A DNA stretch of 64,000 nucleotides from Macrostomum lignano (taxonomy: Eukaryota), in contig NIVC01001361.1 of assembly GCA_002269645.1 (NCBI GenBank), positions 186,001 through 250,000 of the forward strand, given 5' to 3'. The position numbers and the translations under genes were made by a program. How positions within the stretch are numbered: position 1 is the stretch's first letter; each line of letters opens with the position of its first letter. This document shows, piece after piece, positions 47,456 through 53,865 of this stretch. Below the pieces are notes generated by a model. It was given only the letters and a program-made list of their open reading frames with translations. It was not told the DNA's origin and did not search any database.

Positions 47456-50400
47456 TCAGTCGCCCCCTTCGCCAATGAGCTGCAGCAGGCCGCTGTGGTA
47501 CACCCCGCCAGCGAAGCCGCGAAGGCAGCTGGCCAGAGCGTCGCCGTGAGCGGCCAGGAAGGCCTCCTTGATCTGCACCATGTCCACCTCGCAGCGGCTG
47601 ATCACCACGCGAAGTACGACTCGATCGTCGTGGTCTGCGAGCGAAGCCAAAAACATGCTTTTGTTACTTTTTCCAATGTACTAGGGGCTCTGTTTGAAAA
47701 AATCAGCTTCTAAAGACCACCATCTCTTCTTCACCATCTTTCCAGATACCATCTTCCCAGATACCATCTTCCCAGACACCATCTTCCCAAACACCATCTT
47801 CCCAAACACCATCTTCCCAAACACCATCTTCCCAAACACCATCTTCCCAAACACCATCTTGCCAGACACCATCTTCCCAGACACCATCTTCCCAAACACC
47901 ATCTTCCCAGACACCATCTTCCCAGACACCATCTTCCCAAACACCATTTTCCCAGACACCATCTTCCCAAACACCATCTTCCCAAACACCATCTTCCCAA
48001 ACACCATCTTCCCAAACACCATCTTCCCAGATACCATCTTCCCAAACACCATTTTCCCAGACACCATATTCTCAAACACCATCTTCCCAGACACCATCTT
48101 CCCAGATACCATCTTCCTAAACACCATCTTCCCAGATACCATCTTCCCAGACACCATCTTCCCAGACACCATCTTCCCAAACACCATCTTCCCAGACACC
48201 ATCTTCCCAGACACCATCTTCCCAGACACCATCTTCCCAGATACCATCTTCCTAAACACCATCTTCCCAGACACCATCTTCCCAGACACCATCTTCCCAG
48301 ACACCATCTTCCCAGACACCATCTTCCCAGACACCATCTTCCCAGACACCATCTTCCCAGACACCATCTTCCCAAACACCATCTTCCCAGATACCATCTT
48401 CCCAAACACCATCTTCCCAAACACCATCTTCCCAGATACCATCTTCCCAGACACCATCTTCACAGACACCATCTTCCCAGACACCATATTCTCAAACACC
48501 ATCTTCCCAGACACCATCTTCATCTTCCCAAACACCATCTTGCCAGACACCATCTTCCCAAACACCATCTTCCCAGACACCATTTTCCCAGAAACCATCT
48601 TCCCAGACACCATCTTCCCAGACACCATCTTCCCAGACACCATCTTCCCAGACACCATCTTCCCAGACACCATCTTCCCAGACACCATCTTCCCAGAAAC
48701 CATCTTCCCAGAAACCATCTTCCCAGACATCATCTTCCCAGACACCATCTTCCCAGACACCATCTTCCCAGACACCATTTTCCCAGAAACCATCTTCCCA
48801 GACATCATCTTCCCAGACACCATCTTCCCAGACACCATCTTCCCAGACACCATCTTCCCAGACACCATCTTCCCAGACACCATTTTCCCAGAAACCATCT
48901 TCCCAGACATCATCTTCCCAGACACCATCTTCCCAGACACCATCTTCCCAGACACCATCTTCCCAGACACCATCTTCCCAGACACCATCGTCTGTTGCCA
49001 CCCACTCACAGGTGCCGTGCACTGCTTTGTTCAGCAGGTTGGCAAAGTAACCGGGCCTGCTGCAGAGGCACCGCAGCAGCGTCAGCAGCCGTTTTCGTCC
49101 ACCACCGGCAGGGACTCGAAGTTTCACCATCGACGCGAGGTTTTCGATCCCGCCGCCGCCGCTGTCTTCGCCGCACAGAAGCCGCTGGCACTCGGCAAAC
49201 GCCGCCCGCATGTGCGCGTTGCTCCTCTCGGTCAAGAGCTCCGTCAGGCGGCCGCCAGCAGCCCAGCCGGCCGGACTTTCGTCCGCCAGAGTGCGGCCGT
49301 CGCGACGGGCCTGGTCGCAGTCGAATACGGCGCCCTCGGGACGGCTGCGCCCGGCGAGGCCGTTCAACAGCGTTTTGAACGGGCCGCTGATTCCTTCCAG
49401 GGCGTCTTCGGCGAAGCTTCTGCCGTACACTGCGGGATAATAGGATTGGGATTTGTGTGGGATGGGATTTGTGTGTGATGTTATTTGTGTTGGAGGGGAT
49501 CTATGTGTGTTGTGGGATTTGTGTGGGATGGGATCTGTGTGGGATGGGATCTGTGTGGGATGGGATTTGTGTGGGGTGGGATCTGTGTGTTATGGGATTT
49601 GTGTGGGATGGGATCTGTGTGGGATGGGATCTGTGTGGGATGGGATCTGTGTGGGATGGGATTTGTGTGGGGTGGGATCTGTGTGTTATGGGATTTGTGT
49701 GGGATGGGATCTGTGTGGGATGGGATCTGTGTGGGATGGGATCTGTGTGGGATGGGATCTGTGCGGGATGGGATTTGTGTGGGGTGGGATCTGTGTGTTA
49801 TGGGATTTGTGTGGGATGGGATCTGTGTGGGATGGGATCTGTGTGTGTTGTGGGATTTGTGTGGGATGGGATCTGTGTGGGGTGGGATCTGTGTGTTATG
49901 GGATTTGTGTGGGATGGGATTTGTGTGTGATGAGATTTGTGTGTGATGGCATTTGTGTGTGATGGAATCTGTGTGTGATGGGATTTTTATGGGATGGGAT
50001 TTAAGCGCTCTATAGTTTGATTACTGATGGGATCGATATGCACTACTTTTTTCAATCATACAATCAGTAGCATATTCCGCTCACTCTGCCGATAAGCCAT
50101 TTTGGCAGCCTCAATTTTGGACTGCGTCCTGGAGCAAAAAATCTCGATCAGGCTGGCTTCATCCGCCTGCGGCGACTCCAGCGCCTGGCGCAGCTGGCAG
50201 GCGTCGAACTCGGACTGGTCGAGGCAGAGAAGCCCACAGAGTCGGTCAAAATCTTTGGCGTCTGGCGCGCCGGGCTCTGGGAACTTTTCGGACAGGCACT
50301 GTCCGTCCGGGTCGATGTCAGCGAAGGCGGCCGAGATGGCAGCCCGCTGCGAGGCCACCCGTCGGGTGAGGATGTCGATGATGGACTTCTGGTCTACCGG

Positions 50401-53400: not shown

Positions 53401-53865
53401 CAGGCGTCGGCCAAGACCACCCAGCTGTACAATGCCAAGTATTTTTTGCTGACAAGACAGCAGGTTGACGCAGCAAGTCATCAATGCAGCGTCCATTCAA
53501 GCAACCTGCAGCGTCGTCGGCCACTCTCTGAGCTGTACTACCTACAGCTGGTGCTGTGGGTGTTGCTCCTGACGCTCAGACACCTTTGCGTTGCGTCGTG
53601 ATCTGCTGGCTCTGTTGCTGGCTTGGCCTATAGTTTTAAGTCCTACAGACTGCGTCCTGTCGCTGCATTCTAAATGCATTAAAGAGATGCGTTTTTTTCA
53701 CTTACCGTCCATGCCGATAATCTCAATCCGCGTGGCCGTGTCCACCTGCCAGACGCGTCGACGCCTGTCAAAGCGGCATCGGCCGTCGGGCATCGGGCGG
53801 ATCAGTGGCGGCTCCGGAGCCGCTGCCGCGGCGCTATGGAACGGTGCAACTACTGCTCGGCAGTG
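47456..53865 (-). CDS. Atypical annexin fusion: DZANK1-type N-terminal CHB_HEX_C/Fn3-associated domain, S/P/E-rich linker and 4-repeat annexin core, ~748 aa. Exons 53865-53706, 53298-53015, 52393-51989, 51880-51599, 51050-50855, 50405-50085, 49429-49010, 47634-47456
   Basis: Eight exons joined by GT-AG introns have matching phases (2247 nt, open). The N-terminus PEPPLIRP...QVDTATRIEI...IYFTTDGTEP...TFLYEGPFCLNAGNRTVRALAV resembles the DZANK1 N-terminus as I recall it (VPQIIP...EIDNNTLLEM...IYYTLDGSKP...[22 protein letters not shown]). The annexin core has GTLHPAENFRPTEDAEAIQRAL, IIDILTRRVASQRAAI, LIEIFCSRTQSKI, LLTERSNAHMRAAF and LRVVISRCEVDMVQIKEAF. No ATG was found ahead of the conserved start. 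Confidence 0.8.
47715..48990. repeat. 15-bp minisatellite in the last annexin-fusion intron
   Basis: Unit ACACCATCTTCCCAG. Confidence 0.95.
49443..50002. repeat. ~16-bp G/T-rich minisatellite in an annexin-fusion intron
   Basis: Unit GGGATGGGATCTGTGT. Confidence 0.9.
50418..50845. repeat. (GTTA)n microsatellite in an annexin-fusion intron
   Basis: Direct reading; it is the reverse complement of the CTAA/TAAC motif. Confidence 0.95.
51205..51570. repeat. 18-bp G-rich minisatellite in an annexin-fusion intron
   Basis: Unit GGAATTGGGGGTGTCTGT. Confidence 0.92.

What the first reader, a model, noticed from the sequence alone, without database searches (positions are those of the whole stretch)
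47456..53865. Annexin fused to a DZANK1-type N-terminal beta-sandwich domain
Seen in sequence: eight GT-AG exons chain with matching phases into one ~748-aa ORF. Exons 1-3 encode PEPPLIRP/QVDTATRIEI/IYFTTDGTEP/FLYEGPFCLNAGNRTVRALAV/SATEVAEFLCR. A ~230-aa Ser/Pro/Glu-rich linker follows, then a complete four-repeat annexin core. Established knowledge: this CHB_HEX_C/Fn3-associated-like module is the N-terminus of DZANK1, a ciliary/dynein-transport-associated protein in which it normally precedes zinc ribbons and ankyrin repeats; annexin N-terminal heads are usually short or low-complexity. Inference: domain shuffling replaced the DZANK1 C-terminal domains with a membrane-binding annexin core, giving a possible membrane adaptor for ciliary transport. 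I do not recall this architecture being described, but I cannot search for it.
Basis: partly seen in the sequence, partly recalled or inferred. Interest (0 to 1): 0.85.

Follow-up and report, generated by a model that had tools for sequence, protein, structure and literature searches.

The report
DZANK1-headed annexin gene, divergent flatworm copy
The eight-exon gene is real and already deposited as a Macrostomum lignano hypothetical protein; it is a degenerate copy from an apparently undescribed but conserved family that joins the front half of the ciliary protein DZANK1 to an annexin core.

Summary
Eight AG/GT exons on the minus strand (53865-47456) splice in phase into 748 codons plus TGA. 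The product is identical to GenBank PAA68959.1 (Macrostomum lignano Mlig030870.g3, "hypothetical protein, partial"), and the window is identical to that contig.

The N-terminal domain is DZANK1-type. A family profile matches DZANK1 in PDB 11xu, residues 1-103, at E=1.7e-22. The window copy matches a profile built without it at 99.3% probability.

The fusion is not unique to this gene. The same architecture occurs in:
- a canonical M. lignano paralog (Mlig011209, 764 aa);
- a tapeworm protein;
- two unidentified eukaryotes, one with eight annexin repeats.

The canonical paralog also matches DZANK1 residues 448-521.

The window copy is degenerate. Its annexin fold is intact (TM 0.86-0.90), but all four GxGT calcium loops are lost, repeat scores are low and the central DZANK1-like region is not detectable. 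An invariant GTQIN motif, which resembles a dynein light chain LC8 site, is kept. Two genomic copies give dN/dS 0.35.

Calcium-dependent membrane binding is therefore doubtful for this copy. I found no paper describing the family. Function is inferred, not shown.

The parts
53866..53871 (-). Acceptor ATTCAG immediately upstream of exon 1; candidate spliced-leader (SL) trans-splice site
   Evidence: Exon 1 starts right after AG in phase 0, with no ATG. The M. lignano SL ends in ATG, and the trans-splice acceptor motif is [T/C]TNCAG (PMC8629364). The deposited protein is flagged 'partial'. SL use is inferred, not shown.
53706..53865 (-). Exon 1 (aa 1-53, ends in phase 1): first strands of the DZANK1-type domain (PEPPLIRP...VDTATRIEI)
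   Evidence: The intron position and phase are shared with the paralog P0019.
53015..53298 (-). Exon 2 (aa 54-148): Cys/Arg-rich insertion, then the conserved core IQIYFTTDGTEPNP...GREVTFLYEGPFCLNAGNRTVRALAV
   Evidence: The insertion (aa 54-76) is modelled as a low-confidence loop.
51989..52393 (-). Exon 3 (aa 149-283): last strand of the domain, Ser/Glu-rich linker and the GTQIN motif
52058..52090 (-). GGTQINLFGGG motif (aa 250-260); G-T-Q-I-N-x-x-G is invariant across nine family members; candidate LC8/DYNLL-binding strand
   Evidence: Alignment A6, coordinates. The resemblance to the optimal LC8 binder VSRGTQTE is taken from PMC6607443. Binding was not tested.
51599..51880 (-). Exon 4 (aa 284-377): Pro/Ser-rich linker
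   Evidence: The exon 4-to-5 junction is also present in the independent older model P0002. Similarity to the central DZANK1 region is not significant.
50855..51050 (-). Exon 5 (aa 378-442): pre-annexin helix and start of annexin repeat 1
50085..50405 (-). Exon 6 (aa 443-549): rest of repeat 1 (with a 14-aa insertion) and most of repeat 2
49010..49429 (-). Exon 7 (aa 550-689): end of repeat 2, repeat 3 and start of repeat 4
   Evidence: The flanking introns sit at the same alignment column and phase as in P0019.
47456..47634 (-). Exon 8 (aa 690-748) with stop codon TGA at 47458-47456
52364..53817 (-). Genomic span of the DZANK1-type Fn3_assoc beta-sandwich (aa 17-158, across introns 1 and 2)
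   Evidence: Pfam; hhalign 99.3%; BLASTP to DZANK1 E=2e-7; AlphaFold2 model pLDDT 77, pTM 0.67, all-beta
47459..50921 (-). Genomic span of the four-repeat annexin core (aa 421-748), lacking all four GxGT calcium loops
   Evidence: Pfam Annexin 97 bits; repeat HMM hits at aa 433-473, 509-571, 610-629 and 677-741; model pLDDT 80 with TM 0.86-0.90 to annexins A2 and A4; loop sequences
54523..56167 (-). Context: upstream same-strand DUF4200 (CCDC42/CFAP73-like) gene, 657 nt from exon 1
   Evidence: No AATAAA or ATTAAA lies in the gap. The same pairing occurs at copy g8.
38212..45939 (-). Context: downstream same-strand PKD2-like channel gene, about 1.5 kb after the stop codon
   Evidence: The annexin-then-PKD order is kept at copy g8 and at the canonical paralog locus.

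Best explanation
The locus is the already deposited Macrostomum lignano gene Mlig030870.g3. It is one mRNA of eight exons encoding a 748-aa protein.

The protein has three parts:
- a DZANK1-type N-terminal beta-sandwich;
- a disordered linker that keeps one invariant short motif (GTQIN..G);
- a four-repeat annexin fold.

It is a divergent paralog within an old family in which the front half of DZANK1, without zinc ribbons or ankyrin repeats, is fused to an annexin core. The canonical members are Mlig011209 in the same species and a tapeworm protein. They keep all four calcium loops, and Mlig011209 also keeps a second DZANK1-like region. The window copy has lost both.

Inferred steps:
- Translation most likely starts at the AUG donated by the spliced leader. 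The gene may be co-transcribed with the upstream DUF4200 gene.
- The N-terminal half probably docks the protein to the partners DZANK1 uses: the LC8 dynein light chain and ciliary or centriolar microtubules.
- The annexin core of this copy probably acts as a calcium-independent scaffold rather than a calcium-switched membrane binder.

Shown: gene structure, identity, homologies, family distribution, loop loss and purifying selection. Inferred: SL start, LC8 binding, ciliary location and calcium independence.
For: - Gene structure: exon chain and ORF; identity to PAA68959.1 and gene span.
- Transcript basis: the deposited annotation is transcriptome-guided and is cut at trans-splice and poly(A) signals (PMC5730564).
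- DZANK1 homology: family profile to PDB 11xu DZANK1 residues 1-103, E=1.7e-22. Window N-terminus against a profile without it, 99.3%, E=3.7e-20. Pairwise BLASTP E=2e-7. Paralog P0019 also matches DZANK1 residues 448-521, E=1.9e-6.
- Same architecture elsewhere: P0019 and P0014, locus L006 with eight annexin repeats, and L008/L009.
- Shared gene structure with P0019: two introns at the identical alignment column and phase, one two columns apart in the same phase, and two more nearby. Shared synteny with a PKD channel gene.
- Motif: GTQIN..G is invariant in nine sequences.
- Annexin core: the fold is intact, but 0 of 4 GxGT loops remain and repeat scores are low.
- Selection: dN/dS 0.35 between copies g3 and g8; 12 nonsynonymous of 23 changes, one-sided binomial p=0.013 against neutrality.
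- SL start: the SL ends in ATG and the acceptor fits TNCAG.
- DZANK1 partners: DZANK1 binds DYNLL1/2 (PMC4617706). It is assigned, with an LC8 dimer, as a microtubule-associated protein on the A-tubule of transition-zone doublets (bioRxiv 10.64898/2026.06.11.731632).
Against: - No RNA reads were available here, so the junctions and the SL site rest on the deposited annotation and on comparative evidence.
- An older UniRef model (P0001) starts exactly at the first codon of exon 5. This could reflect an annexin-only transcript.
- The window copy alone gives no phmmer hit to DZANK1.
- Its central region does not match the DZANK1-like profile (E=0.55).
- A profile of the GTQIN motif finds nothing in the PDB, DZANK1 included. 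A shared LC8 site is therefore unproven, and TQI is not the canonical TQT anchor.
- The dN/dS estimate rests on only 23 substitutions.
- I found no expression data.
Confidence: 0.75

Rival explanations
1. One reading: a one-off domain shuffle in this gene created a new calcium- and membrane-binding adaptor for ciliary transport.
For: The architecture and the DZANK1 homology are real. DZANK1 is linked to dynein and the cilium. The neighbouring genes belong to families linked to cilia.
Against: The fusion is shared with a paralog, a cestode and other eukaryotes, so it is old and not specific to this gene. This copy lacks every GxGT calcium loop and has weak repeats. The protein is already deposited.
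Confidence: 0.08
2. There are two separate mRNAs: a short DZANK1-like gene (exons 1-4) and an annexin gene (exons 5-8). They are merged in the annotation because M. lignano makes polycistronic precursors that are resolved by trans-splicing.
For: About 7% of assembled M. lignano transcripts are multi-gene precursors (PMC5730564). The older model P0001 starts exactly at exon 5, and its acceptor is in phase 0, so an SL AUG would be in frame.
Against: The ORF is continuous, with no stop between the parts. The older model P0002 carries the exon 4-to-5 junction. The same fusion is in the paralog P0019, which has its own Met, and in a tapeworm gene model from a separate genome annotation. An intron lies near the same place and in the same phase in P0019. 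The exon 5 acceptor CGTAG does not fit the TNCAG trans-splice motif.
Confidence: 0.07
3. The gene is a decaying, functionless duplicate (an expressed pseudogene in the making) of the canonical DZANK1-annexin gene.
For: Calcium loops and the central region are lost. There are odd Cys/Arg-rich insertions. The Pfam annexin score is 97 bits against 292-315 bits in relatives.
Against: Both genomic copies keep 748-749 intact codons and all splice sites. dN/dS is 0.35 (p=0.013). The beta-sandwich core and the GTQIN motif are kept, and both domains are predicted to fold with confidence.
Confidence: 0.1

Closest known systems
[quoted passage not shown]
   Same: The N-terminal ~100-residue Fn3_assoc-type beta-sandwich is homologous from residue 1. 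In the canonical paralog, DZANK1 residues 448-521 are also matched.
   Different: There are no zinc ribbons and no ankyrin repeats; an annexin core takes the C-terminal place. The window copy has also lost the central region. LC8 binding is known for DZANK1 and only conjectured here.
M. lignano Mlig011209.g4 / Mlig005283.g1 (PAA61558.1, UniRef A0A267EJ83, named 'Annexin', 764 aa)
   Same: Same domain order, the GTQIN motif, shared intron positions and a PKD channel gene downstream.
   Different: The annexin cores are 37% identical and the N-terminal parts 30%. The paralog has its own Met, four GxGT loops, strong repeats (315 bits) and the DZANK1-like central region.
Anoplocephala perfoliata KAM7533338.1 (704 aa, hypothetical protein)
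   Same: Fn3_assoc, NHSGTQINVYG and four annexin repeats in one gene model from a separate genome annotation.
   Different: It is the canonical type, with intact calcium loops, and is 36% identical to the window protein.
Conventional annexins (A2, A4, A5) and annexins with long heads or eight repeats (A7, A11, A6)
   Same: Four-repeat alpha-helical core; TM 0.86-0.90 to A2 and A4. One unidentified relative has eight repeats, like A6.
   Different: The head is a folded DZANK1-type domain plus linker, not a short or low-complexity head (that description of conventional heads is established knowledge). The type II calcium loops are absent in this copy.

Membership tests
Annexin (PF00191) | Four ~70-residue annexin repeats forming the helical core | tested here: met
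   Pfam scores 97.1 bits against a cut-off of 25, in 3 stretches. A repeat HMM finds four repeats at 20, 45, 4.6 and 35 bits. The AlphaFold2 model has pLDDT 80 and Foldseek TM 0.86-0.90 to annexins A2 and A4 over about 330 columns.
Annexin (PF00191) | Type II calcium loops (GxGT plus a distal acidic residue) | tested here: not met
   All four loops are replaced: NESPV, ESPQA, GWAAG and HGTYH where P0019 and P0014 have GLGT, GVGT, KWGT and GMGT (alignment A2).
Annexin (PF00191) | Calcium-dependent phospholipid binding | not testable with these tools
   Needs liposome co-sedimentation with and without calcium.
DZANK1 | N-terminal Fn3_assoc-type beta-sandwich homologous to DZANK1 residues 1-103 | tested here: met
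   Family profile to 11xu_G1, E=1.7e-22. Window sequence against a profile without it, 99.3%. BLASTP E=2e-7. phmmer with the window sequence alone finds nothing.
DZANK1 | Double zinc ribbons | tested here: not met
   The Pfam scan of the full model gives only Annexin, Fn3_assoc, CHB_HEX_C_1 and a sub-threshold MID_pPIWI_RE match (12.3 bits; cut-off 26.6).
DZANK1 | C-terminal ankyrin repeats | tested here: not met
   No ankyrin hit. The C-terminus is an annexin core.
DZANK1 | Central conserved region (DZANK1 residues 448-521) | tested here: not met
   hhalign of the window linker against profile A5 gives E=0.55. The region is present in paralog P0019, E=1.9e-6.
DZANK1 | Binding of DYNLL1/2 (LC8) | not testable with these tools
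   Only a candidate motif, GTQIN, is available. The motif profile finds no PDB match.
DZANK1-head annexin family (Mlig011209 / A. perfoliata type) | Beta-sandwich, then GTQIN motif, then annexin core in one ORF, with shared introns | tested here: met
   Synteny with a PKD channel gene.
Pfam Fn3_assoc / CHB_HEX_C_1 | Score above the gathering threshold | tested here: met
   On the N-terminus alone, 25.9 and 24.2 bits against cut-offs of 23 and 22. On the full protein, 22.9 and 20.6 bits, just below the cut-offs.
SL trans-spliced M. lignano gene | SL-containing reads ending at the first-exon acceptor | not testable with these tools
   Indirect evidence only: no ATG, acceptor ATTCAG, phase 0, an SL that ends in ATG, and a 'partial' flag on the deposited protein.

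The most novel reading that the evidence does not exclude
The DZANK1-head annexins are an undescribed annexin subfamily, conserved in flatworms and at least two other eukaryote lineages. They would tether an annexin membrane-binding core to LC8 and to ciliary or centriolar microtubule doublets through the part of DZANK1 that sits on the transition-zone A-tubule. They may stand in for canonical DZANK1 in flatworms. The window gene would be a derivative of this linker that has lost its calcium sites.
Probability: 0.3. Interest if true: 0.7.

Novelty: new variant of a known kind. Interest (0 to 1): 0.5.

Why it matters
Annexin heads are normally short or disordered. A folded head borrowed from DZANK1 would give annexins a defined docking site on cytoskeletal structures.

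DZANK1 was recently assigned, with LC8, as a microtubule-associated protein on the A-tubule of transition-zone doublets. A natural fusion of its front half to a membrane binder suggests a testable link between doublets and the ciliary membrane. It also indicates which half of DZANK1 can work without zinc ribbons and ankyrin repeats.

The two M. lignano paralog groups, one with calcium loops and one without, form a natural comparison, and the species can be made transgenic.

For annotation, the result shows that proteins named only 'Annexin' or 'hypothetical protein' hide this architecture, because the head scores at or near Pfam's thresholds.

Tried and rejected
- The full-length homolog search timed out.
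- A word-indexed search with the N-terminus alone found nothing, not even the deposited protein. The exhaustive phmmer search was needed.
- A profile search of the N-terminal family returned mostly short, unnamed exon fragments and no named DZANK1. The DZANK1 link came from the PDB sequence search instead.
- Foldseek of the N-terminal model gave no significant hit. The structure library ends on 2026-04-08 and does not list 11xu. The best partial match was the Fn3_assoc-like domain of 8ayr.
- The GTQIN motif profile found nothing in the PDB.
- The window linker against the DZANK1-like central profile was not significant.
- P0060 turned out to be a bacterial Fn3_assoc protein and is irrelevant.
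- I found no papers or held supplements naming Mlig030870 or Mlig011209, and none naming the assemblies or runs of the unidentified relatives.
- I considered an alternative in-frame acceptor 72 nt into exon 2 (CAAG|CT), which would remove the Cys/Arg-rich insertion. I did not adopt it, because the deposited model uses 53298 and no reads were available.
- The SL sequence itself is not in the window.
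Full report
**Observation**

The eight exons are 53865-53706, 53298-53015, 52393-51989, 51880-51599, 51050-50855, 50405-50085, 49429-49010 and 47634-47456. All start after AG. Exons 1-7 are followed by GT, and exon 8 ends at the TGA stop. 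Phases match, giving 748 codons plus TGA. Exons are GC-rich (57-68%) and introns less so (30-55%). There is no ATG at the start: exon 1 begins directly after an acceptor.

**Identity**

An exhaustive phmmer search with residues 1-420 returned a 748-aa protein that is 100% identical to those residues; its full sequence equals the rebuilt model. It is GenBank PAA68959.1, "hypothetical protein BOX15_Mlig030870g3, partial", from Macrostomum lignano. The window is identical to that contig segment.

That annotation was built from RNA-seq assemblies and cut at trans-splice and poly(A) signals (PMC5730564). This is indirect transcript support for a single mRNA. A second copy, g8 (PAA85020.1, 749 aa), lies on another contig with the same neighbours.

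**Domains**

- Pfam gives Annexin at 97 bits. Fn3_assoc and CHB_HEX_C_1 score 22.9 and 20.6 bits on the full protein, and 25.9 and 24.2 bits on the N-terminus alone, against cut-offs of 23 and 22.
- The window sequence against a profile that includes DZANK1 but excludes the window gives 99.3% probability, E=3.7e-20. Pairwise BLASTP to DZANK1 gives E=2e-7. phmmer with the window sequence alone finds nothing.
- An AlphaFold2 model of residues 13-163 is all-beta (pLDDT 77). The Cys/Arg-rich insertion is a low-confidence loop.
- The annexin part models with confidence (pLDDT 80, pTM 0.79). It superposes on annexins A2 and A4 with TM 0.86-0.90.

**A family, not a one-off**

The same search found other proteins with the same order of parts:
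- Mlig011209.g4 (764 aa, UniRef "Annexin");
- Anoplocephala perfoliata KAM7533338.1 (704 aa).

The Mlig011209 protein matches DZANK1 twice: residues 4-105 to DZANK1 3-103, and residues 282-353 to DZANK1 448-521. The family therefore carries the front and middle of DZANK1 without the zinc ribbons, and with the ankyrin repeats replaced by annexin.

Two unidentified eukaryotes show the same exon order on one strand:
- a compact genome from run SRR30952576, with eight annexin repeats;
- a 29% GC genome from ERZ24986310.

A mollusc fragment from Nucella lapillus has the head and the motif.

The window gene and Mlig011209 share two introns at the identical alignment column and phase. A third lies two columns apart in the same phase, and two more are nearby. 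Both genes are followed by a PKD channel gene. The PKD paralogs are about 40-45% identical and the annexin paralogs 37%, which points to an old block duplication.

**A conserved motif**

G-T-Q-I-N-x-x-G is invariant in nine sequences, including the otherwise very divergent window copy. In many fragments it reads GPINPVNYSGTQINVWG. It resembles the optimal LC8 binder VSRGTQTE, and the anchor positions of LC8 sites tolerate mid-sized hydrophobic residues (PMC6607443).

DZANK1 binds DYNLL1/2 (PMC4617706). A 2026 preprint assigns it, with an LC8 dimer, as a microtubule-associated protein on the A-tubule of transition-zone doublets. LC8 binding by this family is an inference. The motif profile finds nothing in the PDB, DZANK1 included.

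**Degeneracy of the window copy**

- All four GxGT loops are replaced.
- Repeat scores are 20, 45, 4.6 and 35 bits, against 76-102 bits in the relatives.
- The central DZANK1-like region is not detectable.
- Two Cys/Arg-rich insertions interrupt the head.

The gene is not simply decaying, however. Copies g3 and g8 both keep the full ORF. They differ by 11 synonymous and 12 nonsynonymous changes, giving dN/dS 0.35 (one-sided binomial p=0.013).

**Start and transcription unit (inferred)**

The M. lignano spliced leader ends in ATG, and trans-splice acceptors carry [T/C]TNCAG (PMC8629364). Exon 1 follows ATTCAG in phase 0, so the leader's AUG would be in frame. This would explain the "partial" flag.

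The upstream DUF4200 gene ends 657 nt away on the same strand, with no AATAAA or ATTAAA in between. By that paper's 1-kb rule, this is an operon candidate.

An older model, P0001, starts exactly at exon 5. Another, P0002, carries the exon 4-to-5 junction. An annexin-only isoform cannot be excluded, although the exon 5 acceptor (CGTAG) does not fit the trans-splice motif.

**Literature**

I found no paper that links DZANK1 and annexin structurally, and none that mentions Fn3_assoc together with annexin. The sequences are public but carry uninformative names.

**Verdict**

It is wrong about uniqueness, and it is doubtful about membrane binding for this copy. Function remains inferred.

Noticed in passing
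window 47732-48989, 49447-50002, 50417-50853, 51205-51565: Introns 4-7 of the gene are each filled almost entirely by a different tandem array: a 15-mer x83, a 16-mer x34, (AGTT)n and an 18-mer x20. Array lengths differ between the two genomic copies; intron 7, for example, is 1,375 nt in one and 918 nt in the other.
   Followed up: partly
window 56167-38212, minus strand: Three same-strand genes lie in a row: DUF4200 (CCDC42/CFAP73-like), the DZANK1-head annexin, and a PKD2-like channel. All three belong to families linked to cilia (that link is from general knowledge, not tested here). The order is repeated at copy g8, and the annexin-then-PKD pair also occurs at the canonical paralog locus. 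This could be an operon or a co-regulated block.
   Followed up: partly
proteins P0001, P0002, P0006 (older UniRef M. lignano models): These models are frameshifted read-through chimeras of this annexin with the downstream PKD channel gene. One is named 'PKD_channel domain-containing' and one 'Guanylate cyclase domain-containing'. They are most likely artefacts of the older, error-rich assembly.
   Followed up: partly
locus L006 9833-13558 (Logan SRR30952576): An unidentified compact eukaryote encodes the DZANK1-type head, the NYSGTQINVWG motif and the central helix, followed by eight annexin repeats (annexin A6-like). This fits the fact that a 55-aa head fragment in JGI data is named 'annexin A6'.
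   Followed up: partly
window 53231-53298: A second in-frame acceptor (CAAG|CT) lies 72 nt into exon 2. Using it would remove the Cys/Arg-rich insertion and give a junction closer to DZANK1 and to the paralog. It may be an alternative 3' splice site.
   Followed up: no
window 59935-63551, plus strand: A NIPSNAP-domain gene lies on the opposite strand, upstream of the cluster.
   Followed up: no
window 2850-3416, 4717-5678, 9700-10740, 11395-12430, 13939-14920: Long stop-free stretches in several frames come from further tandem arrays, seen only as repetitive translations (SVCL..., TDRQ..., a 56-nt unit, ANQR/PAGW units). The window is rich in satellite-like repeats.
   Followed up: no
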